Below, in pieces: positions 21,092 through 34,543 of a stretch of 64,000 bases of DNA. The notes below the pieces were generated by a model. It worked only from the letters and a program-made list of their open reading frames with translations. It was not told the origin of the DNA and ran no database searches. How positions within the stretch are numbered: position 1 is the first letter of the stretch; each line of letters starts with the position of its first letter. Position numbers and translations under genes: made by a program. The stretch is taken from the sequence record OQ603353.1. One strand, written 5' to 3'.

Positions 21092-22024
21092 ATGGGAACG
21101 ATCACCATTTCAGTGACAGAGCCTTTGCCTACGTTCGACAGTCTGTATCAGGCAATGCTCCCGAATCTGACGTTCCCGCCAACCGGGTTCCAGTGGCCTC
21201 CCGCCCTCCCCGGCATCCCTACCATGTTCCCTTCTATCAGCTGCCCTAACATGAGTGGCGTCATGGCAATGGGCCAGCTGATGACCGAACAGCTGCTTAC
21301 GTCTGCGTTCATGATGATTAAGCCTATCTCGGAATTCCTAGGCTTGGCAATGTCTGCCATTCCCAAGATTCCCATCCTGAACATTGGCGTAGACCAGCTG
21401 CTAACTATGTCGGGTGACGATTTGATCGCGGCAGTAAAAGGCGCAATGCCTTCGCTACCCAATCTCTATTTCTCTCTCGACATACCGGACATCAACATCG
21501 TGCAGTGGCTGACGCAGCTGAAGTCTAGCTATCTAATGTCGCTAGCTGGATACTTGCAAAACATCATCAAGCAGGTGACAGACAAGATCAAAATTCCGGG
21601 CATGCCCACGTTGCCTACCATCCCCACGATGGAGGACGTGAAGCAAATGCTGATAGATCAGATTCCTCCTCCGATCAATGACCTTCGCAACGTTGACCTC
21701 AACGCGCTGTTGGCCAACATCAGCATCCCAGGCATCCCCTTCGATTTCTCGTTGCCATCGCCTTTTATCCCCAACATTTCGATGCCTGAGATTGATTTCA
21801 ACGAAATGATTTCGGGGCTGTACAATAGCATCGTCATGATGCCGATGAAGACAATGCAGGACTTCATCATGGACAAACTAAGTAGTGTGATTTCCCTCCA
21901 GCTGCCTACGCTGGTTTTGGTCATTCCCACTATTGAAATCCCCATTCCGGAAATCCCCATCCCTGTTATCCCGCCACTGCCTAGCATCCCGGACCTGCCT
22001 CCGCTCACCATTCGAGGCCCTTGA
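21092..22024 (+). CDS. Pro/Ile/Met-rich protein with three internal repeats, putative spike-tip protein
   Basis: 310 aa; directly after the spike where PAAR genes usually sit; repeats LP.P..P.IS.P.I plus amphipathic helix. Confidence 0.55.
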   Translation: MGTITISVTEPLPTFDSLYQAMLPNLTFPPTGFQWPPALPGIPTMFPSISCPNMSGVMAMGQLMTEQLLTSAFMMIKPISEFLGLAMSAIPKIPILNIGVDQLLTMSGDDLIAAVKGAMPSLPNLYFSLDIPDINIVQWLTQLKSSYLMSLAGYLQNIIKQVTDKIKIPGMPTLPTIPTMEDVKQMLIDQIPPPINDLRNVDLNALLANISIPGIPFDFSLPSPFIPNISMPEIDFNEMISGLYNSIVMMPMKTMQDFIMDKLSSVISLQLPTLVLVIPTIEIPIPEIPIPVIPPLPSIPDLPPLTIRGP

Positions 22025-22025
22025 A

Positions 22026-22967
22026 ATGCCTGTATCTAATCCACCTACCTTGTTGAGTGTCATTGCAGAGTTCGGAGGCCCTAACAATCTTGGGGCCTAT
22101 TACCGCAAAGGTCCATACGTACCTGACGGTCCTCCGCAGAATGCCAACATCAGTGATACGCCGGGCGGTCTTCGTCTCAGTCAGTTTGCGGGTGCGGTCA
22201 AGTACAATCTCAGTGCGTCCCTGAATCGCACGACCGCCAACACCAGTGGTAGTGGCAACAGCCAGTCGGGACGTGTCCTAACTCCACAGCTGATTGTTTA
22301 CCCCGTTAACGGCAGCGGCAACTACAGCTACTACTGGAACTACACCGCAGGCGTCCCTGTTAGCGGAAATACCAGTAGTACGTTCCAGCTGTACGCTGAT
22401 CTCAACAATGGTCAGAACATTTCTGGCAACGGTAACTGCGTGGTTACCGATAACGTCACTGGTCAGAATGCGATCCCTAGCTTTACGTTCTACCTAAGCT
22501 GGACGTATGAACGCCCACCCACCTGTGTTGTCATGGAAGCATACCTGCACGATGGAAAGCAGGCAGGCATGTACAACTCCAACGATCCTCTGCTGTTGGT
22601 CGATCCATACGCAAGGACTTCGGAGACGCTGAACATCGTAGATGCGCAGACCTTCACCCGAGAGTGTGTGACCTTGGTTACTGCCAATGGCTCACGCCTA
22701 ACGTGCTCCACCACTGCACCTATTCCAGTCAAAGCCGACTCGGAAACGCTGGTTCGTGCGGTGGATGCTCTAGGCCACCACGTTGCTACTACCACACGCC
22801 CTAACGACGTGATCCCATCGGTCACTTGGGATAAGGTAGTGCGTGTGCTGCCTGCTGGTGAGCGTGCTGTCCGCAATATCTACATCTACGACAAGTGCTT
22901 CTGGGCTTCGGATGACAATCGTTCGTTCATCCTCCATCACAACACGACTGGTAAGCAGATCATATGA
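22026..22967 (+). CDS. Fibre-tip adhesin A with C-terminal Hint (intein-like) domain
   Basis: ATG 22026; N-terminal SNPPTL.SV..EFGG docking domain; Hint from Cys 22524 (CVVMEAYL) to HHN 22943, followed by TTGKQII. Confidence 0.75.
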   Translation: MPVSNPPTLLSVIAEFGGPNNLGAYYRKGPYVPDGPPQNANISDTPGGLRLSQFAGAVKYNLSASLNRTTANTSGSGNSQSGRVLTPQLIVYPVNGSGNYSYYWNYTAGVPVSGNTSSTFQLYADLNNGQNISGNGNCVVTDNVTGQNAIPSFTFYLSWTYERPPTCVVMEAYLHDGKQAGMYNSNDPLLLVDPYARTSETLNIVDAQTFTRECVTLVTANGSRLTCSTTAPIPVKADSETLVRAVDALGHHVATTTRPNDVIPSVTWDKVVRVLPAGERAVRNIYIYDKCFWASDDNRSFILHHNTTGKQII

Positions 22968-23569
22968 TCGTCAACAAAGAACCACGCACCGCTACTCCGA
23001 TGAATTGGTTGCCTACGTACTACCTCAGTCGGATGTTTAACGCAGAAGAGTGCGCCACCATCATCAAGGAGTCAGAGGACTCCGGACTGTTTGTGCAAGG
23101 CCGCACCATTGGCGACAATAACGTGACTGTAACAGAGCAAGGCCGTCAGGTGGCCATTATCCGACTGGCTGGAGGTACGCTGTACGAAATGATGCGCCAA
23201 CGGATACTGGAACGGCTGCCTGACCTAAACTCCTGCTATCAGTTTGAACTGTTCGGCGCAGATGAAGTCTTCAAGGAAATCCATATCCTGAAGTACGTGG
23301 AAGGTAATTTCCACGGTGAACATTTGGACCTCGCCGGTTACGAGGAAATGTGCAACCGGAAGCTCAGCCTCATCGTCCAGTTGAATCCGGATTACGAGGG
23401 CGGTGAATTAGTCCTCTACAACTCTTATCCCGAGAAACCTCTGACCAATAGCAAGCAGGCTGGCGACGCAGTGGTGTTCCCTGCATGGATGCCGCACGAA
23501 GTAAGACCTGTTGACTACGGGACTAGATACGTTCTTGTGGTTTGGTTGCGAGGCCCTAAATTTAGATAG
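22964..23569 (+). CDS. 2OG-Fe(II) oxygenase (prolyl-hydroxylase-like), catalytic motifs intact
   Basis: HLD (HxD), RKLSLIVQL, YEGGEL, VFPAWMPHEV (distal His), GTRYVLV.W (2OG-binding Arg). Confidence 0.9.
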   Translation: MIVNKEPRTATPMNWLPTYYLSRMFNAEECATIIKESEDSGLFVQGRTIGDNNVTVTEQGRQVAIIRLAGGTLYEMMRQRILERLPDLNSCYQFELFGADEVFKEIHILKYVEGNFHGEHLDLAGYEEMCNRKLSLIVQLNPDYEGGELVLYNSYPEKPLTNSKQAGDAVVFPAWMPHEVRPVDYGTRYVLVVWLRGPKFR

Positions 23570-23579
23570 GGAGGTACTC

Positions 23580-24167
23580 ATGGCCGTATCAAACCCACCA
23601 ACATTGGTGAGCGTGCGTAACGAATTCGGTGGCAACGGAAATCTCCGTGCCTACACACGAGGCGGTGGCCTTGTTCCAGATGGGCCTGCGCAGAATGCGA
23701 ACATCAGCAAAACTCCGGACGGTTTGCGGCTTAGTCAATTTGCAGGAGCAACTAAAATCACTGCACAGTTGACCGACATTTATGCGCAGCAGTCCTACTA
23801 CGGACAATCGGGTCAAGACAACACTGCTTCTGCCACCATCCAGTTTAGTACCGATGGCAACATCTACTACACATGGGGTATGGGAGCTTTGCAGACGTAC
23901 CGATGGTTGGCTGGCGGTAATGCAAGTGATTTTGACGTAGAAGGATTTAATCAGCAGATCGCAGGTAACGGTCAAACCTCGGGCACGATGAATCGTCAGA
24001 ATTTGGGTGGTTCTCCCCGATGGTCATGTTCCGCTGCAACCCGATTTGGTTTTGTTGATTCTTCCATGTCATTTGGCTGCCGAATCTACCAAGCGGGTAC
24101 TGGTAACGTTATCGCTACAGCGAATTTCAGTATTTATGCCGCCGCCTCAGATGGTAGCATCGGATAG
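23580..24167 (+). CDS. Fibre-tip adhesin B (no Hint domain)
   Basis: ATG 23580 with GGGAGG RBS; first ~57 aa closely match the N-terminus of 22026. Confidence 0.75.
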   Translation: MAVSNPPTLVSVRNEFGGNGNLRAYTRGGGLVPDGPAQNANISKTPDGLRLSQFAGATKITAQLTDIYAQQSYYGQSGQDNTASATIQFSTDGNIYYTWGMGALQTYRWLAGGNASDFDVEGFNQQIAGNGQTSGTMNRQNLGGSPRWSCSAATRFGFVDSSMSFGCRIYQAGTGNVIATANFSIYAAASDGSIG

Positions 24168-24222
24168 CAACTCCATCTTCTAGTAACAACCAAAACGTTT
24201 GACACAACAAGGGAGAAGAAAC

Positions 24223-24900
24223 ATGTTCCAAGAAAGGGACCAAACTACAGCCAAATGGAATCCCCTCTGCCACGAACAGGTCAACTTGATTAACTCTTCG
24301 CTGATCGCGCGCCTCAAGGCGAAGGCAGATGAGTATCCGGTTAACCCTTACGGTTGTGGGTGGGATAACGGCGTTCCACTGGACCTTACTGCACCAACGG
24401 CCAGTGACGCGTCGCCAGAAGCTGCGTTGATTCACGACACCCGAACACTCATCGCAGAATGCGTCCACCGCCTAGCAGGCTTCTATCCATTCGATTTGTA
24501 TTTCAAGGATGCGGCCTTTGTTGTTCCTGCCCCACAACCTTCTTCGGTACGCTTAGTGCGACTCGCTATGGGTGCGAAGCTTAATCCGCCCCACGCTGGT
24601 ACGGCGGTTGCTCCCGGCGCCACGAATCGCATTGATCTGAATACGCATAGTCAGGCTCATCAGAAGATTCATATGATGATCCCGCTCTCTGCTTACGAAG
24701 GTAACGACGTGTTCTTCCCCTTCTTCGATCCGAACTTGCAGGAATGGAAAGACGTGTCGCCCACCATCACTAACGCACGGGCTGACTGGACAGGCATCAC
24801 GTTGTCATGGCCTGCGTGGCGGTTGTGTAGGTTCAGTCCCGTCGAGGACGGCGAAGCCTACCTCCTGCTAGTCACGTTGTACGGACCTCGCTTCCAGTAA
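24223..24900 (+). CDS. 2OG-Fe(II) oxygenase-like paralogue lacking catalytic residues
   Basis: Aligns to 22964 (YEG, WPAW, PV..G, L.V.L.GPRF) but HxD is PHAG, distal His is absent (WRLCRF), and the Arg is lost (EAYLL). Confidence 0.7.
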   Translation: MFQERDQTTAKWNPLCHEQVNLINSSLIARLKAKADEYPVNPYGCGWDNGVPLDLTAPTASDASPEAALIHDTRTLIAECVHRLAGFYPFDLYFKDAAFVVPAPQPSSVRLVRLAMGAKLNPPHAGTAVAPGATNRIDLNTHSQAHQKIHMMIPLSAYEGNDVFFPFFDPNLQEWKDVSPTITNARADWTGITLSWPAWRLCRFSPVEDGEAYLLLVTLYGPRFQ

Positions 24901-24926
24901 GTGCCCACATCTAATTCGGAACCAAC

Positions 24927-25331
24927 ATGGCAACCACCAACAACATCCTGTTTAGTGACTTCAACACGCTAGTCGGGTTGAATAACAAGCAAGCCATCGT
25001 CATCAATGATGATGCAGTTGCCAATGTGGTGCTCAACATTGTTCTGATCCAGAAGCGCAGCCGTAAGTTTCGGATTGGGTATGGAGCATCAAGTCACTTC
25101 TTCCTGCAAAAGCAGGTGACTGCTGAGAACGCGGAGAAGTACAGGATGACCCTCTACCAAGACCTGACCAAATGGGCCGGGTCTGTAGCCAAGTTTGATA
25201 TGGCGGGCATCCAAGTGAAGCCTCTCCAGAATTACGACGGTTACGGAGTGGTCATCCTGTACAAGTCCAACCTTTCGGGTTACTACAATCAGGTTTCAGT
25301 CCAGCTGCCGTCCACCTCGGTGGCACGCTAA
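24927..25331 (+). CDS. Baseplate wedge subunit gp25-like
   Basis: 134 aa; DAVANVVLNIVL...SRKFRIGYGAS gp25/gpW-like pattern; upstream of gp6-like gene. Confidence 0.75.
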   Translation: MATTNNILFSDFNTLVGLNNKQAIVINDDAVANVVLNIVLIQKRSRKFRIGYGASSHFFLQKQVTAENAEKYRMTLYQDLTKWAGSVAKFDMAGIQVKPLQNYDGYGVVILYKSNLSGYYNQVSVQLPSTSVAR

Positions 25332-25404
25332 TACCGAAAATAGGGCCAAAATAGGCCCACAGCACCCTACCCACAGGGCGCCAAATTTAGAGGCTCCAGC
25401 TTCC

Positions 25405-25452
25405 ATCTACGACCCCAATCCTTGCGTCAAAACGCATAGTTGGGGCGTAGAT
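25405..25452 (+). promoter_or_regulatory. Nested stem-loop in the gp25-gp6 intergenic leader
   Basis: ATCTACG(A)CCCCAA pairs with TTGGGGCGTAGAT (13 bp, 1 bulge) and encloses TGCGT-CAAA-ACGCA. Confidence 0.55.
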
Positions 25453-25514
25453 TTTGGCTACATTTTCCACTCCCCAACCCTCATTTTCCTATGGCCACTG
25501 ACCGGAATTCAACC

Positions 25515-27272
25515 ATGACAACTGTAACCGCGTTGTCCAATATCCGCCCTGACTTCGATGACATTGCAGCACAGCTGGGATCGAGTCTGACGCGCAAGGC
25601 GAACTGGGCTCCGCTGCTTCCTACTCAGACTGCAAGCCTCTTGATTGAAGGCGTGGCCGCCGCCACTGCGTTCCTGCAAACCGGTGTGCAGAACAGCTTT
25701 GAAGAAACGTTCCCTCAGACCGCCCGTATGCCTTCGAGCCTGCGGGCGTCTGCGCGTCGGCTCGGTGTCCGTCTGACGCGCAAGTCCCCTGCACAGACTC
25801 GGGTACGGCTCACGCGAGCCACCGCAGCCACGTCCGTCCTGATCCCTGAGTTCTCGGCCTTCCAAGCGCCGGGTGTGTCTCTGTTCAACCGCTCTGCCAT
25901 ACTGTTCCCCGTCGGTACCCTCTCCGCTGAATTCGACTTGTACGAAGGCTTTATCACTCAGGTTTCGTACACGGGTCAAGGTGCTGACAGTCAGATGATC
26001 GTTGTATCTGTCCCCGGCTTCACCATCAGCAACATGGACGTGCGGGTCACTGTCAGTGGCCGTCCGCTGCAAGTGGTGACTGATGGCATCTGGCACTACC
26101 CCATCACGAACAGTGGCGATCCTAACTACGTGGTATCGGACAACACGCTGCCTACGGGCGAGCTTCTGCTTGAGTTCGGTAACACTCAGTTCGGCATGAT
26201 CCCTCAGCGTGGTGCGCAGATTCTTGTGTCCTATGCTGTGACCAATGGTACCTCCGGCAACAACGTACAGTTTGAGAATCAGCGCATCACGTACTCGGCC
26301 AACGGTGTTGAGTTCACTGGCAGCGCGCTTACTCCACTCACCGGAGGTACTGACGAACTTGACGCAGAGCAGTACCGCGATAGTCCGTTGATCTACGCGT
26401 CCTACGAGCGCGCGGTTGCTATTCCAGACATGCCTGCTATTGCTACGAAGTATCCCGGCGTTGTCGATGCCATCTTCCTTGGTCAGAAGGACATTGCTCC
26501 GAACCTCAAGGAATTCATGAACGTCGTCTACACTTACGTTCTGATGGATACGGGTTCTCAGATTTCTGCTGCGCAGTACACGGACTTCCTCAAGTGGTGG
26601 CAGCCGCGCTCGATGCCTCTTGAATACGTCCGCCAAACCGCCAAGCAGATTGCAGTGGACGTTGCAGGCACCATCTACATCACGGGTCAGGGCGATCCGG
26701 ATTCCATCTTGGCCAAGGCGCGCGCAGCAGTTGCCAAACTGTTCACTGCACGCCAAGGTTACTTGGGTCGCGATCTGTACGTGGACGACCTTATTGACTC
26801 CATCCGTACTTCGGACCCTTACGTTGACCACGTTACCCTGACTTCACCCACCGCTGACGTTATCTGTAAGATCAACGCACCGCAGGCCCCTACTGTTACC
26901 CCGGCTACTGGCGGTACGCTCCCCAACGGTACGTACATCTATTCGGTGTCTGCTGTCTCCAATCTCAGCCCTGTGCAAGAAACGTTCGCTTCGGTGAATG
27001 GTGCGGTGACGCTGACGGGAACGAACAACGCCGCACGTATCAAGTGGAATGCAGTGGCAGGTGCTGTGCAATACAAGGTGTACGGGCGCACTGCTTCCCA
27101 AGAAATGTTCCTTCTGGCCACGGTCAGCGCATCTTCTGCGCTTGAATTCTTGGACACGGGTTCTGTTACTACTGGCGCTGCTGTCAACAAGATCAACACT
27201 GCGGGTATCTCTTACGTTACCCTCAACAATACGAACTTGCAGGTGGCGTTCACTGATCGAGTAGGTGTCTGA
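25515..27272 (+). CDS. Baseplate wedge protein gp6/gpJ-like with Fn3-like insertion near the C-terminus
   Basis: ETFPQTARMPSSL, LLEFGN..FGMIP, GGTDE.D.EQYR, ERAV..D motifs. Start could be 25491 or 25515. Confidence 0.88.
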   Translation: MTTVTALSNIRPDFDDIAAQLGSSLTRKANWAPLLPTQTASLLIEGVAAATAFLQTGVQNSFEETFPQTARMPSSLRASARRLGVRLTRKSPAQTRVRLTRATAATSVLIPEFSAFQAPGVSLFNRSAILFPVGTLSAEFDLYEGFITQVSYTGQGADSQMIVVSVPGFTISNMDVRVTVSGRPLQVVTDGIWHYPITNSGDPNYVVSDNTLPTGELLLEFGNTQFGMIPQRGAQILVSYAVTNGTSGNNVQFENQRITYSANGVEFTGSALTPLTGGTDELDAEQYRDSPLIYASYERAVAIPDMPAIATKYPGVVDAIFLGQKDIAPNLKEFMNVVYTYVLMDTGSQISAAQYTDFLKWWQPRSMPLEYVRQTAKQIAVDVAGTIYITGQGDPDSILAKARAAVAKLFTARQGYLGRDLYVDDLIDSIRTSDPYVDHVTLTSPTADVICKINAPQAPTVTPATGGTLPNGTYIYSVSAVSNLSPVQETFASVNGAVTLTGTNNAARIKWNAVAGAVQYKVYGRTASQEMFLLATVSASSALEFLDTGSVTTGAAVNKINTAGISYVTLNNTNLQVAFTDRVGV

Positions 27273-28888
27273 TGACTATCTATAACGGCGATGATCCGAA
27301 TATCTCGTTGCCTAATGCTTCATCCATCAACCCACTAATCACCTACGGCTTCCATCAAGTCTACGGCAAGATGGACGGGAATGGCGTTGTTGTGGATACG
27401 ATGGGCATCATGCTGCCAGAAGGTTTCCGTGATATTGAGGTGTGGCGAGACTTCGCTGATAGCGTCGATGAGATAATGAACAGCGAGATTGCAACGCAGA
27501 TCGAAAGCCTGATGAGCACGAACGACCCGTATGCGTCTTCGGTGAATCCTGCTATCGACCGCCGTACCCTCCTGTACCTCATTGGTGCAATCGGATTCAA
27601 GTACAAGCAAAACGACGTGTTTGACATTGATGATTTGAAGCGGTTCGTTCGGCATACTCCGCAATTTTGGGGTGAGAAGGGCAACCGCTTCTTCATTCAG
27701 TACATGAGCTATGTCGTTAACGCCCAGCTTCAAATGCAATACCTGTGGACGCAGGACTACAAGGTGTTCGTCCCCGAGGGTAGTCCACTGATTGGTCGCC
27801 CTGTATGGGAGTCCGCAGTAAATGCCACTGCCAACGTGGTCCCCTTCGGTACAGGCGATGGTGCTCAGACTGTGTTCCCCCTGATGGTGATGAACTCCAC
27901 CATCGACAGCGTTTCGGGAACCCCTACGATCTACCGCGTTGACTGGGCAGGGCAAACGCGCCTATACAACACGCCACGCACCAACCGCATTAGGCGTAGT
28001 GTTGAAATCGGTAGTTCTGCTTGGTACAACGATAATCCCACCAACCTGATTGTGCAGACCACTTCGGCGTCGGCACCTGACGGTAGCGCGACTGCCAGCG
28101 TGCTCAAACCTATGACTACCGGCGCTAACGCAGGCTCGCTTCTTGATGGTAGCGCAGTGACGCCCGGCCCTGTGACCTGTAGCGTTTATCAATCCTCCGA
28201 GGGATTGACCGCAGGACAGAAGGTTCGGTACGCTCTGTGGAGTGTGGACTCAAGCAACGTTATCAGTCTAGTGGGCCAAACGGATTTGGAATGGACGGGC
28301 ACTCAGATGCGCGTGGCCGCATACAGTGGTCTTGCCTCCAGTGTCCTGCAATCCTTGGGTGATGGTTGGTATCGCATTGAGTACACGGGTACGACTGGCG
28401 TTGGTGCTCGACTCTCTATCCAGCCCGGCCTAACCCACACCAATCCTGTTACGGTGTGGGGCGCTCAGTTGGAGCAGGGTAGCTCTGCGACTCGCCTCAT
28501 CAAGACCTACGGCGTTGAAGTAACCACCACGGATTTCGCCTTTACCAACAATAATCGGAGTATCACCCTGTCTTCGCCGCTCCCCGTTGGCGCGAGCCTC
28601 AGCTGGAGCGGAACGTACAATCAGGCAGGCACTTGGTATCCAACAAGTCACGTATACATCGTCTACGACGTTGATAAGTTCCGAGGCTCAGTCTCGAATA
28701 ATTTCAATAGTCAAGACAGCTTGGCTGCATTTTTCTACACCATCGCTCCAATTGAACTGGTAATCCAGTCCTTCGTGCTCAACGTCAACTTTGATCCTAC
28801 GGTTCTACAGTTGGCAGGTGACGTGCAGATTAGCGTATATACGCCGATGGAAGTGGAAGCTATTACTCCGATGAACACTAGGGCTTGA
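27272..28888 (+). CDS. Baseplate wedge protein gp7/gpI-like with carbohydrate-binding-like insert
   Basis: LLYLIGAIGF..FWGEKGNRFFI wedge motif; FGTGDGAQTVFPL; insert with GDGWYRI..WGAQLEQGSSAT (27980-28507). Confidence 0.7.
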   Translation: MTIYNGDDPNISLPNASSINPLITYGFHQVYGKMDGNGVVVDTMGIMLPEGFRDIEVWRDFADSVDEIMNSEIATQIESLMSTNDPYASSVNPAIDRRTLLYLIGAIGFKYKQNDVFDIDDLKRFVRHTPQFWGEKGNRFFIQYMSYVVNAQLQMQYLWTQDYKVFVPEGSPLIGRPVWESAVNATANVVPFGTGDGAQTVFPLMVMNSTIDSVSGTPTIYRVDWAGQTRLYNTPRTNRIRRSVEIGSSAWYNDNPTNLIVQTTSASAPDGSATASVLKPMTTGANAGSLLDGSAVTPGPVTCSVYQSSEGLTAGQKVRYALWSVDSSNVISLVGQTDLEWTGTQMRVAAYSGLASSVLQSLGDGWYRIEYTGTTGVGARLSIQPGLTHTNPVTVWGAQLEQGSSATRLIKTYGVEVTTTDFAFTNNNRSITLSSPLPVGASLSWSGTYNQAGTWYPTSHVYIVYDVDKFRGSVSNNFNSQDSLAAFFYTIAPIELVIQSFVLNVNFDPTVLQLAGDVQISVYTPMEVEAITPMNTRA

Positions 28889-28890
28889 CC

Positions 28891-30033
28891 ATGACCCAAC
28901 TTTACATCACTGAGGCAGGCATCGCTGCTGCCAACTCGTCCAGTCCTAACGGACCTATGATCCAAATCGTGTCGTTCGCCCTAGGCAGCGATTACGGATA
29001 CACCCCTCCACCGTCCTCCGTGTACCCGGGCGCCAACAGCGTCGTTACTTCGCAGAGTGCGCTACGCGGCACGGTACGCTATCCAGTTGGTACTCAGCGT
29101 GCCGTACCCAGTAACTACCACCTCGCCGCTGATGGTATCACAGGCGTGTTCACGCTAGTGGTAGGTCTGGACGTGGGCGACTTCTCGTTTGGTGAAGTCG
29201 CACTCTACATGCCCGGCAACGTCATGTTCGGTATTGCAGTTCTTCCTCAACTGCAAACCAAACTGACTACCACACAGAGTCAGACGGGCAACATCATCAA
29301 CATGACGGTCAGCTTCCAGCTGAACGGTGTCAAGCCCAACATCACTGTGCAGAATGTCACGACCGCACTGGCTGATATTCGCACGGTCGGTACCGTTGAC
29401 GTGATGAGTCCCCCTTCGGCCAGCCCTACCAACAACGCCATTTCTTTGCAGGTTGATGAATACAACCGCAGCAACTTGATGACGAAGCGTGACACCGACC
29501 TGTGGCAGTCCCAGCAGTATGACTGGATTGTACATGAAGGTGTTGTGCAGGTATCGGGCGACAAGACTCTGAGTGATGCGACTCTGGCTACGTCGCCTAT
29601 CTACGTTGCACCGGGCCGCTACATTCTGCAATTCACCAGTGGTGCGTTGAAAGGTCAGGTTCGCCAAATCACAGCCTTCCCTGTGTGGGCTGCAAGTGTG
29701 GTTCGTCGCGTGGGTGACGTTATTCAGCCTACCAACAATCCCAACGTCCTACTTAGGTGTACTACCGCTGGCACTTCGGGTACTGCACAGCCAACGTGGA
29801 ACACTGGCACTTCGGGTGCCACCACTACGGATGGCACGGCGGTGTGGACGTATACGCCCAACAGGGATTCTCCGAATACCACGCTTTCGTGGGCGGGCTC
29901 TACCTCTTCCAATGCGCTGAACGGCGTTACCTACGCTGTGTACCGTGCCGCATCTTTCAGTGGCATTCGTCAGTACATCGGCGAATACATGCTAGACGCA
30001 ATGCCCATCAACTATTACAACCAACACCACTGA
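28891..30033 (+). CDS. Tail collar/proximal fibre protein with CBM5/12-like module
   Basis: MTQLYITEAGIAAA..IVSFALG..F.FGEVALY tail-collar-type N-terminus; WAAS..RVGDVI..RCTTAGTSG..PTW..DGTAVW module. Confidence 0.7.
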   Translation: MTQLYITEAGIAAANSSSPNGPMIQIVSFALGSDYGYTPPPSSVYPGANSVVTSQSALRGTVRYPVGTQRAVPSNYHLAADGITGVFTLVVGLDVGDFSFGEVALYMPGNVMFGIAVLPQLQTKLTTTQSQTGNIINMTVSFQLNGVKPNITVQNVTTALADIRTVGTVDVMSPPSASPTNNAISLQVDEYNRSNLMTKRDTDLWQSQQYDWIVHEGVVQVSGDKTLSDATLATSPIYVAPGRYILQFTSGALKGQVRQITAFPVWAASVVRRVGDVIQPTNNPNVLLRCTTAGTSGTAQPTWNTGTSGATTTDGTAVWTYTPNRDSPNTTLSWAGSTSSNALNGVTYAVYRAASFSGIRQYIGEYMLDAMPINYYNQHH

Positions 30034-30045
30034 GGATTTCCCAAC

Positions 30046-30393
30046 ATGGCTTTCACTCCTTCCTCCGGCGTCCTCGGTCAGATCAAGCCCTCGGGTGCCA
30101 CTGAGACTGTTCTCTACACCTGCCCTGCGGATGCACGTGCCTCCATTAGTGTCACCTGCTGCAATACGGATAGTGGTTCCACTACTGTAACGGTCAAGGT
30201 AAGGTCAGGTTCTACCTCCACTGCTCTTGTGAGCGGCGCACAGTTGGCACCTGCTGGGGAACAGGGACACTCAATCGACATTCGCGCTCTGATTCTTGGG
30301 CCGGGCCAATCGGTAGCAGTCACTAGCTTCAGCGGTACTGTAGATTTCAGTGCAATCGGGTACACGGCGCCTTCCAACGTCGTTGCGTTCTAA
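30046..30393 (+). CDS. Small structural protein (fibre-associated)
   Basis: 115 aa beta-rich (VLYTCP..SVTCCNTD); GAGGA RBS; between fibre genes. Confidence 0.6.
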   Translation: MAFTPSSGVLGQIKPSGATETVLYTCPADARASISVTCCNTDSGSTTVTVKVRSGSTSTALVSGAQLAPAGEQGHSIDIRALILGPGQSVAVTSFSGTVDFSAIGYTAPSNVVAF

Positions 30394-30403
30394 GAGGTGA
30401 CCG

Positions 30404-32689
30404 ATGATTACCCATCAGGATACACTGTTCTCCAACATCCTATACGGAAATAATTGGAGTGCAGCTACCTACCAAGCCGCAAATCGGTTCACCATCCAAG
30501 GTGACAAGCGAACTTCGTATGAGGTAGGTACCCAGGTTCAGATTCTCACGTCTGCTGTAGCTACTATGCAGTACAGCTACGTTAGTGCAGTTACGTTCGC
30601 CTCCAACGTTACTACGGTGACGGTGAGCGACGGTCTATTCGCTTCGGGTCAGAAGATCAACGTTCGTGCATCGCCGTTTGGTGCCAACAACATGCCCCTC
30701 GGCCGACGCTTCAAAGAAATCAGCGTGTTCGGTGCGAACGGCCTGACGATCTCGAATGCGAGTCCGAAGTTCACCCTGTTCGTTGAAGGCGTTGGTGCGG
30801 GCAAGGTCAACACGTTCACTTTCCAGCCGGGCTCGGATGGTATCTCGTTCAAGGTTGGCCGTGATGCAATCGGTCTCGATGCCATGCGCATTGACGCCAC
30901 TTCGACTGCCATCACCAAGGTGACGTTGTTCTCGCCACTGACCTTTGGCGCAACGTACACGGGTGGTCTGACTTCCCTGACCGATCTTCTGACGATTGGT
31001 CAGTATGCACTGACCTATTCGGCTACGGGTTCTTCGACCGGCAGTAACCGCCTGTATGTATCTGGCCCTAACGGTGGTGAGTTCACCGTTGGTCCTACCA
31101 ATGATGCTCAGGTGTTCCGTCGTATTCGACTGCGCGCCACTGACGTTGTGGTCGAGAACAATCCCGGCGGTTCCTCGCAAGCAGGCTCGATCTGGCATAG
31201 CCTCAACTTCGATCCTGACACCCGTGTTACCAAGGGTCAGAATGGTTCTTGGATGGATTCGGCTTACACTGCGATCAACAACCTTAACAACGCTCAGGGG
31301 TATTTCAACCAGTGGGCATCGGGCGCCGCACAGGCTCCTGTTGCAGGTTCGACGGGTGTTGTGCAAACCATGCACAGTGCGGGTGGCAACAACTTTAACC
31401 CTGTGGCTGGTGCTTCGCTGGTGCAGACGGCTTATGTCACCAATGGCACCGCACCTGCCCTGTATGTGCGACGCAACGTAGGTGCTTCGGGTTGGTCTGC
31501 ATGGACTAAGCTGTATACCCAAGCAGATTTCTCGCTTGGCGATTACGTCAAGATCGCAGGCGGTGATACCATCCAGTCCCCGATCACTGTACGTACTGCC
31601 TTGTCCGTTGGCACGACTGCGGATGCAACGTCCACCCTGAACTTCGGTACCTCGGCCAGTCCCAACGGTCCTGCTGCTACCATTTCTGTTACGGGCGGCG
31701 CAGCGACCACGGGTCGTGGTGCAATGACTATCAACGCGCAGTCCATCGCGCTGCCTGCACTGAACGTCAACGGTACGATGAACGTTTCGGGCGCTGCTTC
31801 GATGGCGGGCCCACTGACCATCACTACTGGCTCCATACTGCTGGGTAACGGCACGTATGGGGAATCGCGTATTAGCAATACCTTCGACGACTGGTATTTG
31901 TATTCCAGTCCTACGGGACTTGGCTGGTACAGTATCAGTAAGGGTAGTGCTTTCTCACTGGACAAGAACAGCAAGGCGTTCACGTTCAATGGTGCGGGTA
32001 CCATCAACGGTCAGACTACCATCAATGGTGGTCTGAACGTGGCGAGTGGTAGCGGTATCATCACTTCGGGCAACGTTGTTGGTGCCAACGGCAACTTCTC
32101 CAATGACGTGTTTGCTCCGGGCGCTTTCCGTGGTGCTCGCCTGCACATTTACGCAGGCTGCATTGCCTACGGTCAGGGCTTCCTGCCTAGCTGGAACGAC
32201 TACGGTGATGGCGCAACGGTCCTGACTAACGCACGCGGCGGTGGTACGGGCGGTTTCAAGTTCCGTCAGATGAATAGTGACGGTGGTGGTCAGGTTTTCC
32301 TTGCCTTCATCAACCCGAACGGTACCATCGGTTCGGCGTCGGACGAACGCATGAAGGAATTCGGTAAGGTACTCGACCTGTCTGACGCTCTTCGGTTCAT
32401 CCGTGAGCAGCGAGTCAAGCATATCAAGTGGAAGCACACCGGCGAGGAGGATATTGCGTTTGGTGCGCAGAGCATCTTCAAGACCACTAGGTTCCTGGCC
32501 CACTATGACAAGGGTGCTGACTTCTGGCAGCTGTACTACCCGAAGGTCGCTCTGTATCATCACGAAGCTCTCTTCCATATCCTTGAAGTGCAGAACAATC
32601 ACGAAGCCGACATTCAGATTCTGATTCGCAAGAACGAAAATCTGGAAGAGGAAGTGAAGCAGCTGCGCGAACGGTTGGATTCTCTCTAA
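30404..32689 (+). CDS. Long tail fibre with C-terminal peptidase S74-type intramolecular chaperone
   Basis: 761 aa, Gly/Thr/Ser beta-rich; IWHSLNFDP knuckle; SDERMKE motif then coiled-coil end. Confidence 0.85.
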   Translation: MITHQDTLFSNILYGNNWSAATYQAANRFTIQGDKRTSYEVGTQVQILTSAVATMQYSYVSAVTFASNVTTVTVSDGLFASGQKINVRASPFGANNMPLGRRFKEISVFGANGLTISNASPKFTLFVEGVGAGKVNTFTFQPGSDGISFKVGRDAIGLDAMRIDATSTAITKVTLFSPLTFGATYTGGLTSLTDLLTIGQYALTYSATGSSTGSNRLYVSGPNGGEFTVGPTNDAQVFRRIRLRATDVVVENNPGGSSQAGSIWHSLNFDPDTRVTKGQNGSWMDSAYTAINNLNNAQGYFNQWASGAAQAPVAGSTGVVQTMHSAGGNNFNPVAGASLVQTAYVTNGTAPALYVRRNVGASGWSAWTKLYTQADFSLGDYVKIAGGDTIQSPITVRTALSVGTTADATSTLNFGTSASPNGPAATISVTGGAATTGRGAMTINAQSIALPALNVNGTMNVSGAASMAGPLTITTGSILLGNGTYGESRISNTFDDWYLYSSPTGLGWYSISKGSAFSLDKNSKAFTFNGAGTINGQTTINGGLNVASGSGIITSGNVVGANGNFSNDVFAPGAFRGARLHIYAGCIAYGQGFLPSWNDYGDGATVLTNARGGGTGGFKFRQMNSDGGGQVFLAFINPNGTIGSASDERMKEFGKVLDLSDALRFIREQRVKHIKWKHTGEEDIAFGAQSIFKTTRFLAHYDKGADFWQLYYPKVALYHHEALFHILEVQNNHEADIQILIRKNENLEEEVKQLRERLDSL

Positions 32690-32732
32690 GGACATTGGGC
32701 ACAGGGACGTGCTCCCTTTTTAGGTAGAGGCT

Positions 32733-34124
32733 ATGTGGATCACCCCTCAGAATCAAACTCTTGATGACACGTTCGATCCCTACTTTCCGGGTACAACTCG
32801 GTGGTATGGTTATACCGGCATCCTCATCAACAACACGCAAGACACCTACGATCGGTACGCTCCTTTGCAGTATGGCAGGCAAGCTCCATCCACGGCGATC
32901 CTTGCGCAGAATCAGGTAGACCTGAATCAGATTTACGCAGCCCGAGGTACAGCAGGCTACCTGCAAGGTATCTCTATCCCCAATTGCTACGTAGGTTGCT
33001 CGGGCGTTACCATCAACGATCTTCTCGCTGCGCGATGCACCATCATCATCAAGAACGACGGTACGTGGCAGCAGTGGTTCTATTCCACCAACTACAAGAC
33101 GGATAGCCCGGGTGCGTATGCACCTCCCAATCGCGGCATTCCTCGAACCGAAACCAACTTCAGCAACGGACGCATGAACGCCGCTGGTAACTGGGCACAG
33201 ATTCCGTTCGCTGGTGTAGGTAACAACTACGAGACTTTCTGCCACGCTCCTTGGGCCCCCTACGAAAGCAAGAACCCACCCGATCTGGATTGGGGTACTG
33301 CCGATCACTATAATCGGTACGATGGCGCACTCATCAACTATATCTGGCACAACTTTAAGGGCCAAGGACAGTTCGGTAGCGCTAGTGATCCCTACGTGGT
33401 GCAGAACACTACACAGAACCCTAATGAAGACATTCCAGATGGTCGGGTATATCGCATCGACCGCGATATTCGGTTCACCCTTGGCTTGACTGCACAGGGA
33501 CGCAACAACGTTCGTTGGAACTACGATGACAACGGTGCTCTGTCATGGTACAACCGAGCCAACTTTTCGGTGTACATTCAGACACCCGGCGGCGGTCAGC
33601 GTGTAGGTGCCACGTGCTTGATGACCAATGAGATTCGATGGAACGCGTGGAATTGGACGGGTGGTAGCGTTGGTGGAGGTGGCGGCGGAGGTGGCGGCGG
33701 TTGCGTTGCTGCTACCAGCTATGTTGACTTCCAAAAGACCGCAGGCACGGTTGAGGCGGGCGACTATCTGATGGGCATGACTGATGATCTGCAATTCATG
33801 GAGCTACATGTCCTGAGCGTGCGTCGTCAAGTACAGCCATGTGTCCGACTCTACTCCAAGAGTGGTGTCACCCTTGTGTGCTCAAAGTCTACGCCGCTGA
33901 CCCTACAGAACGGAGACTGTGTGCTGGCAGGCGAGGCACGTGCAGGCATTAAGCTTCCGGTACGATTCTTCGCTGCTGATCCTGAGTGGGAAACCATCAT
34001 CAAGATCGAGGAGGTTGGCAACCGAGAAGTGATGCTCATCAACTGCGGTGGACAGAGCTATGCTGCCGGTGAGTTGCCGGGCCGTTATATCTACACCCAC
34101 AACAACAACCAGCAGAAGATGTGA
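32733..34124 (+). CDS. Fibre-tip adhesin C with Gly10 linker and C-terminal Hint domain
   Basis: 463 aa; aromatic/Asn-rich body; G10 then Cys 33702 (CVAATSYV), LVCSKSTPL, WETIIKIEEVG.REV, IYTHN 34103. Confidence 0.78.
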   Translation: MWITPQNQTLDDTFDPYFPGTTRWYGYTGILINNTQDTYDRYAPLQYGRQAPSTAILAQNQVDLNQIYAARGTAGYLQGISIPNCYVGCSGVTINDLLAARCTIIIKNDGTWQQWFYSTNYKTDSPGAYAPPNRGIPRTETNFSNGRMNAAGNWAQIPFAGVGNNYETFCHAPWAPYESKNPPDLDWGTADHYNRYDGALINYIWHNFKGQGQFGSASDPYVVQNTTQNPNEDIPDGRVYRIDRDIRFTLGLTAQGRNNVRWNYDDNGALSWYNRANFSVYIQTPGGGQRVGATCLMTNEIRWNAWNWTGGSVGGGGGGGGGGCVAATSYVDFQKTAGTVEAGDYLMGMTDDLQFMELHVLSVRRQVQPCVRLYSKSGVTLVCSKSTPLTLQNGDCVLAGEARAGIKLPVRFFAADPEWETIIKIEEVGNREVMLINCGGQSYAAGELPGRYIYTHNNNQQKM

Positions 34125-34543
34125 TGATTGGTTCTGACCAACTCTCAGAAGTAGGTGTACCTGTCGGAGAGCTCTCCATTGGGAGGACTCTAGACGTATA
34201 TGCGGTGGACGATCTACACTCGGTCATCCGCCTGAAAGGAACCGTCTCAAATCGGGTCCTCCGTAGTGCAGAAGTAGTCACCATCACAACTGCCTCCGGC
34301 GCTTCCGTTGTGGTGGCTGCCCAAAGTCGCCTCCCTGTCTATAGCGGACAGACGGCGCTGGCTAAGAATGTTGGTGCCAACATGATTGCTGTGATGGCCC
34401 CTAATGGCGCTTTTCGGTGGGAGCGGGTTGACACCATCGAGGCTGGTACTGAGGCCGTAGTGGACCTCAAGTGTGAAGGCTACATAGTAGCCGGTAACGA
34501 TCCTAAAACCGGGCTAATCTTGGTGTCTGGATCGCTGTCGTGA
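34121..34543 (+). CDS. Stand-alone Hint-fold-like protein lacking catalytic residues
   Basis: 140 aa; ITTASGASVVV, FRWERVDTIEAG..VVDL..YIVAG align with Hint strands; no Cys1 and no terminal HN. Confidence 0.6.
   Translation: MMIGSDQLSEVGVPVGELSIGRTLDVYAVDDLHSVIRLKGTVSNRVLRSAEVVTITTASGASVVVAAQSRLPVYSGQTALAKNVGANMIAVMAPNGAFRWERVDTIEAGTEAVVDLKCEGYIVAGNDPKTGLILVSGSLS

What the first reader, a model, noticed from the sequence alone, without database searches (positions are those of the whole stretch)
22026..34543. Candidate receptor-binding-protein maturation system: Hint-domain adhesins each paired with active or dead enzyme partners
Seen: three fibre-tip-like genes each have an enzyme-fold gene immediately downstream, two of them overlapping. 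Adhesin A(+Hint) is followed by an active 2OG-Fe(II) oxygenase, adhesin B by a dead oxygenase, and adhesin C(+Hint) by a dead Hint protein. Known: Hint domains self-cleave or ligate a nucleophile to the upstream protein (inteins, Hedgehog); 2OG oxygenases hydroxylate Pro/Asp/Lys; phage fibres often need dedicated chaperones. Inference: a dedicated adhesin maturation system combining autoprocessing, possible hydroxylation or C-terminal adduct formation, and pseudo-enzymes retained as chaperones or structural caps. I do not know this combination as a described system.
Basis: partly seen in the sequence, partly recalled or inferred. Interest (0 to 1): 0.88.

Follow-up and report, generated by a model that had tools for sequence, protein, structure and literature searches.

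The report
Self-cleaving Hint ends on phage tail proteins
Two accessory tail proteins of a Xanthomonas jumbo phage end in a probably self-removing intein-like (Hint) domain from a large, unannotated family, and each sits next to a conserved partner gene (an oxygenase, or a catalytically dead Hint copy), which points to an undescribed way of maturing phage tail proteins.

Summary
The window is the baseplate and tail-fibre module of Xanthomonas jumbo phage Ep026 (PhiXhv group). Proteins A (22026-22967) and C (32733-34124) end in a Hint-fold domain. It starts with Cys, ends with His-Asn and is followed by only 6-7 residues. A is followed, with a 4-nt overlap, by an intact 2OG-Fe(II) oxygenase. 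B is a Hint-less paralogue of A, followed by an oxygenase paralogue that has lost three of four catalytic residues. C is followed, with a 1-nt overlap, by a 139-aa Hint homologue with neither Cys1 nor His-Asn.

The terminal Hint module is widespread: at least 1,273 protein clusters carry it, almost always at the extreme C-terminus, and no Pfam model detects it. The block-B histidine of inteins is never present.

- C plus dead Hint is conserved in all 5 relatives examined.
- A plus oxygenase is conserved in both other A-like genes that could be examined.
- B plus dead oxygenase occurs only in this phage group.
- Oxygenases and Hint modules are not linked in general.

My reading: self-cleaving, BIL-like terminal modules with lineage-specific helper proteins. 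Cleavage, hydroxylation and any adhesin role are inferred, not shown.

The parts
20353..21090 (+). Baseplate hub protein (context, upstream border of the module)
   Evidence: phrog_430 baseplate hub, E 5.9e-29. Relatives hit Pfam Phage_base_V.
21092..22024 (+). Conserved 310-aa Pro/Ile-rich protein that precedes the variable A/B slot
   Evidence: 68% and 46% identical to L007 and L006 counterparts. No family hit.
22026..22967 (+). Protein A (313 aa): about 60-aa N-terminal anchor motif shared with B, a small middle domain, and a terminal A-type Hint
   Evidence: Homologues P0024 (54%), P0025, and the L127 host protein (30% over 269 aa).
22524..22943 (+). A-type Hint domain of A (Cys167 to Asn306), followed by a 7-residue tail (22944-22964)
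   Evidence: Alignment A4 has invariant Cys1, two further Cys, and His-His-Asn. The hintC HMM scores E 1e-38. Homologous to the Hint of C.
22964..23569 (+). A-partner: intact 2OG-Fe(II) oxygenase (201 aa), overlaps the A stop codon by 4 nt
   Evidence: Pfam PF13640, E 2.4e-15. phrog_61, E 4.5e-28. HxD, His and Arg are present. Junction shown.
23583..24167 (+). Protein B (194 aa; GenBank relatives start one codon earlier): paralogue of A without a Hint
   Evidence: Orthologue in L009 is 67.5% identical. No Hint HMM hit.
24223..24900 (+). B-partner (225 aa; the ORF opens at 24199): degenerate oxygenase paralogue
   Evidence: BLASTP E 4e-6 to the A-partner. The ox4 HMM scores E 3e-4. In the catalytic sites Asp, His and Arg are replaced by Gly, Cys and Ala. 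Against PhiXhv there are 11 synonymous and 4 non-synonymous differences, pN/pS 0.11. Found only in 5 genomes.
24927..25331 (+). Baseplate wedge (gp25-like) protein, downstream border of the A/B slot
   Evidence: phrog_261. Syntenic in L006-L011.
25491..27272 (+). Baseplate wedge subunit (J/gp6-like)
   Evidence: phrog_219, E 1.6e-39.
27272..28888 (+). Tail protein with a GTA spike-fibre domain
   Evidence: NCBIfam NF048003, E 1.6e-19.
28885..30033 (+). Tail-collar fibre protein
   Evidence: Pfam PF12571, E 7.8e-5.
30046..30393 (+). Small tail-fibre-like protein (115 aa)
   Evidence: phrog_693 tail fiber protein, E 9.9e-13.
30404..32689 (+). 761-aa fibre protein with a probable S74-type self-cleaving C-terminal chaperone domain
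   Evidence: Full-length homologues in L006, L008 and L010 carry PF13884 Peptidase_S74. The window copy gives no Pfam hit.
32733..34124 (+). Protein C (463 aa): N-domain of unknown fold, a run of 10 Gly, and a terminal C-type Hint
   Evidence: pN/pS is 0.01-0.02 against PhiXhv.
33672..33701 (+). Oligo-glycine linker (Gly314-Gly323) directly before Cys324
   Evidence: In 111/166 family members, at least 4 of the 6 residues before the nucleophile are Gly.
33702..34103 (+). C-type Hint domain of C (Cys324 to Asn457), followed by a 6-residue tail containing Lys (34104-34121)
   Evidence: Invariant Cys1 and His-Asn. pLDDT 77-95. Foldseek TM is 0.81 to inteins, 0.77 to Hedgehog and 0.75 to a bacterial intein-like domain.
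34124..34543 (+). C-partner (139 aa): standalone non-catalytic Hint homologue, overlaps the C stop codon by 1 nt
   Evidence: hhalign 97% probability. Its profile hits inteins in the PDB. It has no Cys1 or His-Asn. Conserved downstream of C in L006-L010.
34623..35300 (+). Conserved 225-aa protein of unknown function between the partner and the endolysins (context)
   Evidence: 39-44% identical in L006 and L007. No family hit.

Best explanation
The region is the baseplate and tail-fibre module of a jumbo myophage.

The Hint module. Two of its peripheral, accessory proteins (A and C) are made as precursors. Their last ~140 residues form a terminal Hint (Hedgehog/intein-fold) domain of a large family that no Pfam model detects. 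The family most resembles A-type bacterial intein-like (BIL) domains.

Inferred reaction:
- Cys1 makes an N-to-S acyl shift at the preceding peptide bond (Gly-Cys in C). The thioester is then resolved, most simply by hydrolysis.
- The terminal Asn cyclises and cuts off the 5-8-residue tail.
- The Hint is therefore discarded, and the mature tail protein ends at the linker.
- In function this resembles the S74 self-cleaving chaperone on the neighbouring 761-aa fibre.

The partner genes.
- The 139-aa non-catalytic Hint copy after C sits where related phages carry a DUF1353 'tail assembly chaperone'. It probably acts as an assembly helper or cap for C.
- The oxygenase after A is probably a protein hydroxylase acting on A. 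Related phage oxygenases sit next to collagen-like fibre genes.
- B and its degenerate oxygenase are a lineage-specific derivative pair. The pseudo-enzyme is kept under purifying selection, presumably as a binding or helper protein.

Shown: the folds, the motifs, the gene adjacency and its conservation.
Inferred: cleavage, hydroxylation, helper roles and virion location.
For: Hint fold and catalytic ends.

Family size and architecture:
- 1,273 clusters with E<=1e-3.
- In 166 full-length modules the first residue is Cys in 142 and Ser in 18. His-Asn is present in 161. The median tail is 6 aa, and it is <=12 aa in 136/161.
- N-terminal parts carry PKD, FN3, CBM or InlB repeats, and one source names its protein 'predicted phage tail protein'.
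- Nine of 30 distinct loci have two consecutive Hint-terminated tail genes.

Dead Hint:
- Homology and missing catalytic residues.
- Adjacency with start/stop overlap in 5/5 relatives.
- Positional equivalence with DUF1353/phrog_1158 in RTH11, LucasX, L013 and L017.
- An analogous active Hint followed by a truncated Hint in cis occurs in P0026.

Oxygenase:
- Family assignment and catalytic residues.
- The A-like plus oxygenase pair is conserved in L011 (54%/50% identity) and in L127 (30%/30%).
- Oxygenase lies next to collagen-like genes in L012 and L041.
- A JmjC oxygenase overlaps a Hint-terminated bacterial protein in L014.

B-partner under purifying selection.
Tail-module context.
Against: - There are no protein-level data. 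No virion proteome exists for this phage group, and papers on relatives give none for these genes.
- The block-B His that most inteins and Hedgehog need for the first step is absent from all 166 family members, being Thr in 121 and Ala in 45. N-terminal cleavage may therefore be slow, conditional or absent.
- Pfam Hint models do not recognise the domain.
- A lacks the oligo-Gly linker.
- The oxygenase family is mostly found in cyanophages beside a helicase gene, not tail genes. It is absent from 29/30 other Hint loci.
- Relatives lacking the A/B cassette show it is dispensable.
- The N-domains of A, B and C match no known receptor-binding fold.
Confidence: 0.58

Rival explanations
1. The terminal Hint does not simply fall off by hydrolysis. 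Its thioester is captured by an amine or hydroxyl (Hedgehog-like or BIL2-like transfer). The result is a covalent adduct or isopeptide at the oligo-Gly C-terminus. The acceptor could be the conserved Lys of the short tail, another tail protein, or a host-surface or small-molecule group. The dead Hint or the oxygenase might then act as acceptor, adaptor or timer.
For: - An oligo-Gly run followed by Cys is the favoured context for thioester formation.
- Every one of 26 close family members has a Lys in the last few residues, and the column is 21/26 Lys.
- The +1 residue is not a conserved nucleophile.
- Structural neighbours include the Hedgehog autoprocessing domain and Tetrahymena BIL2. BIL2 is reported to form an isopeptide between a Lys side chain and a C-terminus (PMC8616854).
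Against: - There is no acceptor-recognition domain after the Hint, unlike the sterol-recognition region of Hedgehog.
- The tail Lys position shifts between subfamilies.
- The absence of the block-B His argues for a weak first step.
- No protein data exist.
Confidence: 0.12
2. The Hint domains are retained, uncleaved structural or binding domains at the tip of the proteins. The fold has been re-used, and the conserved end residues serve structure rather than catalysis.
For: - The block-B His is universally missing.
- The standalone dead Hint shows the fold can serve a non-catalytic role and stay conserved.
- Amino-acid conservation of C is very strong, pN/pS 0.01.
Against: - Cys/Ser1 is kept in 160/166 and His-Asn in 161/166, always at the two ends of the domain, in proteins that share nothing else.
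- The non-catalytic partner family has lost exactly these residues. That is the expected outcome if they matter only for catalysis.
- Inteins that work without the block-B His are documented in the literature (reference list seen).
Confidence: 0.17
3. The oxygenase genes are unrelated cargo sitting in a hypervariable slot of the baseplate module. They could be auxiliary metabolic or nucleic-acid-modifying genes, as assumed for cyanophage 2OG oxygenases. On this view the 'pairs' with A and B are accidents of insertion and duplication.
For: - 0/80 related oxygenase loci carry a Hint.
- Relatives in isolated phages lie next to UvsW helicase.
- The slot holds 0, 1 or 2 A/B-like genes in relatives, some without any oxygenase.
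Against: - Start/stop overlap with A.
- The same A-like plus oxygenase order, with overlap, is found at 54%/50% identity and at about 30%/30% identity in L011 and L127.
- Independent adjacency of oxygenases to collagen-like structural genes.
- A JmjC oxygenase is adjacent to a Hint-terminated bacterial protein.
- The dead copy is under purifying selection.
Confidence: 0.13

Closest known systems
A-type bacterial intein-like (BIL) domains (Amitai 2003 and Dassa 2004, as summarised in PMC7765530)
   Same: Hint fold. Cys at position 1 and conserved C-terminal His-Asn. No conserved +1 nucleophile. Found in variable regions of non-conserved, surface or secreted proteins. Expected to self-cleave rather than splice. 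The C model superposes on the C. thermocellum BIL structure with TM 0.75.
   Different: Here the domain is strictly terminal, with 5-8 residues after Asn. It is preceded by oligo-Gly, lacks the block-B His throughout, sits mainly on phage tail proteins, and comes with partner genes. No sequence-level link to described BILs could be tested.
Hedgehog C-terminal autoprocessing (Hog/Hint) domain
   Same: A C-terminal Hint that removes itself from an N-terminal 'cargo' at a Gly-Cys bond via a thioester. TM 0.77, rmsd 2.6 A to 1at0.
   Different: No sterol-recognition region or any domain after the Hint. The block-B Thr-x-x-His is not kept. A terminal His-Asn is present, which is intein-like.
Pretoxin-HINT of polymorphic toxins (PMC3482391)
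   Same: A HINT autopeptidase embedded near the C-terminus of long filamentous or tail-fibre-like bacterial proteins.
   Different: There the HINT precedes a C-terminal toxin domain that it releases. Here nothing follows it (median tail 6 aa; only 11/161 have 53-109 aa). The Pfam PT-HINT model does not hit.
Peptidase S74 intramolecular chaperone domains of phage tail fibres and spikes
   Same: A C-terminal self-cleaving module on phage fibre proteins that is discarded after assembly. One is probably present on the adjacent 761-aa fibre.
   Different: Unrelated fold and chemistry (Ser-Lys dyad, trimer-dependent). The analogy is functional only.
Tail-fibre assembly chaperones encoded directly downstream of fibre genes (e.g. 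DUF1353/phrog_1158, Tfa-type proteins)
   Same: A small gene immediately after the fibre or adhesin gene, translationally coupled. DUF1353 occupies this position after C-like proteins in RTH11, LucasX, L013 and L017.
   Different: The partner here is a Hint-fold pseudo-enzyme with no similarity to those families.
Viral and bacterial protein hydroxylases of the 2OG-Fe(II) superfamily (prolyl/lysyl/asparaginyl hydroxylases; PF13640)
   Same: The A-partner passes the Pfam threshold and keeps HxD...H...R. Related phage copies lie beside collagen-like genes.
   Different: The substrate is unknown. Most phage relatives are unlinked to structural genes. The B-partner has lost the metal and 2OG ligands.

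Membership tests
Hint (Hedgehog/intein) fold superfamily | Hint beta-fold | tested here: met
   Foldseek with the C model: all top 50 PDB hits are inteins, Hedgehog or BIL, TM up to 0.81. Profiles of the C/A Hint and of the partner family hit inteins by sequence.
Hint (Hedgehog/intein) fold superfamily | Nucleophile (Cys/Ser/Thr) as first residue of the domain | tested here: met
   Cys167 in A and Cys324 in C. Cys or Ser in 160/166 family members. Not met in the C-partner, which starts at its own Met.
Hint (Hedgehog/intein) fold superfamily | Block-B Thr-x-x-His motif | tested here: not met
   The Thr position is Ser in 162/166. The His position is Thr in 121 and Ala in 45, never His.
Inteins (protein-splicing elements) | C-terminal His-Asn followed by a +1 Cys/Ser/Thr on a functional C-extein | tested here: not met
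   His-Asn is present in 161/166. The +1 residue is variable and mostly non-nucleophilic, and only 5-8 residues follow. A alone has Thr at +1.
Inteins (protein-splicing elements) | Insertion inside a conserved site of an essential host protein, often with a homing endonuclease | tested here: not met
   The domain is terminal, on unrelated and variable N-terminal parts. At 135-147 aa there is no room for an endonuclease.
A-type bacterial intein-like domains | Cys1 plus His-Asn without a +1 nucleophile, in variable regions of non-conserved proteins | tested here: met
   against the description in PMC7765530.
A-type bacterial intein-like domains | Sequence membership in the described BIL alignments | not testable with these tools
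   None of the libraries searched returned a BIL or Hint family for the module (Pfam, PHROGs and NCBIfam). Only structural similarity to 2lwy (TM 0.75) and 6y75 is available.
Pretoxin-HINT / polymorphic toxin | Toxin domain C-terminal to the HINT | tested here: not met
   The tail is 7 aa in A and 6 aa in C. The family median is 6 aa.
2OG-Fe(II) oxygenase (PF13640), A-partner | Pfam score above the gathering cut-off, with HxD...H metal ligands and the 2OG-binding Arg | tested here: met
   57.7 bits against 27. Ligands are aligned with three homologues.
2OG-Fe(II) oxygenase (PF13640), B-partner | Same catalytic residues | tested here: not met
   No Pfam hit. Homologous at E 4e-6, but Asp, His and Arg are replaced by Gly, Cys and Ala.
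Peptidase S74 intramolecular chaperone (761-aa fibre) | Pfam PF13884 match with the Ser-Lys dyad | tested here: inconclusive
   The window copy has no Pfam hit. Full-length homologues at 35-39% identity do.
Tail-fibre assembly chaperone (DUF1353/phrog_1158), C-partner | Sequence homology to the family | tested here: not met
   No Pfam or PHROG hit. There is only positional equivalence.
Phage receptor-binding protein or fibre tip (A, B, C N-domains) | Homology or fold match to a known receptor-binding domain | tested here: inconclusive
   No family or PDB hit. The N-domain of the model has pLDDT mostly below 60. The position in a variable slot of the tail module is suggestive only.

The most novel reading that the evidence does not exclude
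Terminal Hint modules are a general ligation device of phage tails. The oligo-Gly thioester would be captured by a lysine, either the conserved tail Lys or a Lys of another tail component. This would give ATP-independent isopeptide cross-links, as reported for Tetrahymena BIL2. Non-catalytic Hint copies and oxygenases would serve as acceptors, adaptors or timers.
Probability: 0.1. Interest if true: 0.85.

Novelty: new variant of a known kind. Interest (0 to 1): 0.62.

Why it matters
Self-cleaving C-terminal modules are central to how phage fibres and spikes fold, and S74 is the only well-known class. If the inference holds, a second, unrelated class built on the Hint fold exists. It is present on more than a thousand protein clusters, yet no Pfam model detects it.

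- It would change how tail-protein genes are annotated. The last ~140 residues would not be part of the mature receptor-binding protein.
- It would affect how recombinant phage adhesins are produced.
- It would give the intein field a large natural family that works without the block-B histidine.
- The conserved pseudo-Hint partner and the oxygenase pairing add testable cases of pseudo-enzymes and protein hydroxylation in virion assembly.

Tried and rejected
- Pfam, NCBIfam and PHROGs on all proteins and on isolated domains. No Hint model hits A, C or the partner, even at E<=10.
- Word-based homologue search with the C-partner found only itself. Relatives had to be taken from syntenic contigs instead.
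It found nothing for the B-partner or for the partner family A6 in IMG/VR.
- A general Hint-oxygenase linkage was tested and rejected. 0/80 oxygenase loci carry a Hint, and 1/30 further distinct Hint loci carries an oxygenase. The Hint-linked oxygenases are not monophyletic. For L012 the link is better explained by collagen-like neighbours.
- True intein and pretoxin-HINT readings were rejected (see membership tests).
- The N-domain profile of C hit nothing in the PDB.
- Promoter and terminator scans gave no more sites than shuffled sequence.
- The papers I found by full-text search do not describe this module. The PhiXhv, XacN1 and LucasX papers give no data on these genes.

Full report
IDENTITY AND CONTEXT

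The 12.5-kb region is 100% identical to Xanthomonas phage Ep026 (and to the record named Erwinia phage Ep032). It is 97-98% identical to the 227-229-kb jumbo phages PhiXhv-12, -15 and -16. In those records nine of the twelve genes are 'hypothetical'.

All genes lie on the + strand. The order is:
- baseplate hub (20353-21090)
- a conserved 310-aa protein
- A, A-partner, B, B-partner
- gp25-like wedge and J-like wedge subunit
- a tail protein with a GTA spike-fibre domain
- a tail-collar fibre and a 115-aa fibre-like protein
- a 761-aa fibre
- C and C-partner
- a 225-aa protein
- two endolysins

The finding therefore sits inside a baseplate and tail-fibre module.

CHECK OF THE OBSERVATION

A (313 aa) and B (194 aa) share an N-terminal stretch of ~60 aa (47% identity, E 4e-25) and then diverge.

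The last 147 aa of A and the last 140 aa of C are homologous (E 2e-7). Both begin with Cys and end with His-Asn plus 7 or 6 residues. In C the Cys follows ten glycines.

The same module ends proteins of XacN1, DLP_6, RTH11 and LucasX. A profile of six such domains finds inteins as its best PDB hits (gp41-1, E 3.7e-4).

In the AF2 model of C, the Hint part is confident (pLDDT 77-95) and the N-domain is poor. The top 50 Foldseek PDB hits are all Hint folds:
- gp41-1 and NpuDnaB inteins, TM 0.81
- Hedgehog 1at0, TM 0.77
- a C. thermocellum bacterial intein-like domain, TM 0.75
- Tetrahymena BIL2

The A-partner is a bona fide 2OG-Fe(II) oxygenase (PF13640, 57.7 bits against a cut-off of 27). Its HxD, His and Arg are intact. 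It overlaps A by ATGA.

The B-partner is its distant paralogue (E 4e-6). Its Asp, second His and Arg are replaced by Gly, Cys and Ala.

The C-partner overlaps the C stop codon by 1 nt. It is a Hint homologue:
- hhalign 89% with the single sequence
- 97% and E 7e-11 over 116-120 columns with family profiles
- its six-member family profile hits inteins directly (NpuDnaB 5.4e-5, Ssp DnaB 7e-4, a VMA intein 8e-3)
- it has no Cys1 and no His-Asn

The label 'fibre-tip-like adhesin' is not verified. No fibre-tip or receptor-binding family and no PDB sequence matches the N-domains.

THE TERMINAL HINT FAMILY

A word-based search found 21 clusters with the C-type module. A full HMMER scan of 1.84 billion representatives found 1,273 proteins at E<=1e-3 and 981 at E<=1e-10.

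In the 166 proteins I hold with a full module:
- the first residue is Cys in 142 and Ser in 18
- His-Asn is present in 161
- the tail after Asn has a median of 6 residues and is <=12 in 136/161
- at least 4 of the 6 preceding residues are Gly in 111
- host proteins range from 162 to 4,560 aa

The N-terminal parts carry PKD, FN3, CBM or InlB-type repeats, or nothing known. Source names are 'hypothetical' or 'predicted phage tail protein'. Some BFVD entries with a similar fold are named 'Hint domain containing protein', so automated annotation has noticed some phage Hint proteins.

No Pfam model detects the module in any member tested.

The block-B position that holds the catalytic His in inteins and Hedgehog is Thr in 121 and Ala in 45 of 166, never His.

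Two subtypes exist. The C-type ends Thr-His-Asn. The A-type ends His-His-Asn and has two extra invariant Cys. They recognise each other by HMM.

Nine of 30 further distinct loci encode two consecutive Hint-terminated proteins. A syntenic relative (L141) has two such genes where this phage has C and its partner.

CONSERVATION OF THE PAIRS

C plus partner. Five syntenic relatives (L006-L010; C 42-57% identical in L006 and L007; partner 31-42% identical) all keep a gene of 139-141 aa directly after C. In four the start touches or overlaps the C stop, and in L010 it lies 3 nt downstream. More distant phages with a C-like protein carry a DUF1353/phrog_1158 'tail assembly chaperone' at that position instead. 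These are RTH11, LucasX, L013 and L017.

A plus oxygenase. L011 has an A orthologue (54%) followed by the oxygenase (50%) with a 4-nt overlap. L127 has an A-like protein (30% over 269 aa) followed by the oxygenase (30%, HMM E 1e-39) with a 1-nt overlap. The only other A-like cluster lies on a 1.3-kb contig that is too short to examine.

Other proteins with an A-type Hint:
- P0027 has a C-like N-domain and an oxygenase three genes away.
- P0026 is collagen-like and is followed by an oxygenase and another collagen-like gene.
- P0028 looks bacterial. It has a double-glycine-leader-like start and an HExxH motif. A JmjC/Cupin_8 oxygenase overlaps it, followed by an HlyD-like exporter.

In a neighbour-joining tree all these Hints fall in one clade of about 13.

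The link is not general:
- 29 of 30 other distinct Hint loci have no oxygenase within 4 kb.
- 0 of 80 IMG/VR loci with related oxygenases have a Hint.
- Relatives in cultured phages are mostly cyanophage genes beside a helicase.
- The Hint-linked oxygenases are not monophyletic.
- The nearest relative of the L012 enzyme (L041) is also preceded by collagen-like ORFs.

The common theme is therefore a protein hydroxylase beside the structural protein it presumably modifies, not an enzyme devoted to Hint chemistry.

B plus B-partner. This pair occurs only in the five Ep026/PhiXhv genomes. The 67.5%-identical B orthologue in L009 is followed by another A/B paralogue, not an oxygenase. L007 has one A/B-like gene alone. 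L006, L008 and L010 have none. The B-partner is nevertheless under purifying selection (11 synonymous and 4 non-synonymous differences, pN/pS 0.11). Within this locus, the paralogue that lacks a Hint is the one whose oxygenase is dead. That is suggestive, but it is a single case.

MECHANISM

Shown: the fold, the motifs, the adjacency and its conservation.

Inferred, in four steps:
1. Cys1 forms a thioester with the preceding residue.
2. The thioester is resolved, by default through hydrolysis. The terminal Asn cyclises and drops the short tail, so the Hint is removed from the mature tail protein.
3. The dead Hint helps or caps C during assembly.
4. The oxygenase hydroxylates A.

The strongest argument for catalysis is the contrast between two sets of proteins. 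Hundreds of otherwise unrelated proteins keep Cys/Ser1 and His-Asn exactly at the domain ends. The standalone partner family has lost exactly those residues while keeping the fold.

The main caveat is the missing block-B His. Inteins that compensate for it are known (reference list seen), but the first step may need help or be slow.

A more adventurous option is capture of the thioester by a lysine. A Lys is present in the tail of all 26 close members. Tetrahymena BIL2, a structural neighbour, is reported to make an isopeptide between a Lys side chain and a C-terminus (PMC8616854). Nothing here tests this.

COMPARISON WITH KNOWN SYSTEMS AND NOVELTY

By features, the module is closest to A-type BIL domains: Cys1, His-Asn, no +1 nucleophile, variable host proteins (PMC7765530).

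It works like the Hedgehog Hog domain in being a self-removing C-terminal Hint at a Gly-Cys bond.

It differs from:
- inteins: no extein, no splicing nucleophile, no conserved insertion site
- pretoxin-HINT domains: nothing follows it (PMC3482391)

It is functionally analogous to S74 chaperone domains. One probably ends the neighbouring 761-aa fibre.

My full-text searches found no paper that combines Hint or intein-like domains with phage tail proteins in this sense. I rate it a new variant of a known kind: a strictly terminal Hint subfamily without the block-B His, on phage tail proteins, with a conserved pseudo-Hint partner and, in one lineage, an oxygenase partner.

LIMITS

- No protein-level evidence exists.
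- Only one structure model could be made.
- Neighbourhood counts are small and not corrected for shared ancestry.
- The trees are rough neighbour-joining trees on short domains.

Noticed in passing
window 30404-32689: The 761-aa fibre directly upstream of C probably ends in an S74-type self-cleaving chaperone domain. Full-length relatives hit PF13884, but the window copy does not. Adjacent genes of one tail module would then use two unrelated self-cleaving C-terminal devices.
   Followed up: partly
L014 38-3689 (metagenomic contig, bacterial-looking): A 410-aa protein with a double-glycine-leader-like N-terminus, an HExxH motif, an oligo-Gly run and an A-type Hint. A JmjC_2/Cupin_8 oxygenase overlaps it by 4 nt, followed by an AprE/HlyD-like export protein. 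It looks like a bacteriocin-style secretion locus using the same Hint plus oxygenase theme.
   Followed up: partly
L012 6001-9724: A collagen-like phage protein carries an active A-type Hint followed in cis by a truncated second Hint copy (hhalign 97.5%). Downstream lie an oxygenase and another collagen-like gene. The closest oxygenase elsewhere (L041) also follows collagen-like ORFs.
   Followed up: partly
window 22026-34543 compared with PhiXhv-12/15/16: Divergence is mosaic. Synonymous divergence is 0-0.03 in A through the J-like wedge (0.07 in the B-partner against two of the genomes), but 0.14-0.28 in the 115-aa gene, the 761-aa fibre and C. In those genes pN/pS is 0.01-0.05. This indicates recombination within the fibre module under strong protein constraint.
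   Followed up: partly
window 22026-34543 (records OQ603353 and OQ603359): The record named Erwinia phage Ep032 (host Erwinia sp. YA1) is 100% identical over 12.5 kb to Xanthomonas phage Ep026. The host labels of near-identical phages disagree at genus level.
   Followed up: no
window 27272-28888: The 538-aa tail protein carries the NCBIfam 'GTA_spike_fiber' head-spike-fibre domain (E 1.6e-19) in a myophage baseplate context.
   Followed up: no
window 21092-22024: A 310-aa protein rich in Ile-Pro and Pro-x-x-Pro repeats. It is conserved (46-68%) in all syntenic relatives directly after the baseplate hub and matches no family.
   Followed up: no
L015, L019, L021, L022, L024, L037, L038, L039, L139, L141: Many phage and prophage-like loci encode two consecutive large tail proteins that each end in the terminal Hint module. 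Three loci lie in Dyella or Thermomonas genome assemblies (L038-L040).
   Followed up: partly
window 32697-32714: A terminator-like hairpin with a T run lies between the 761-aa fibre and C, so C and its partner may form their own transcription unit. The scan as a whole found no more sites than shuffled sequence.
   Followed up: no
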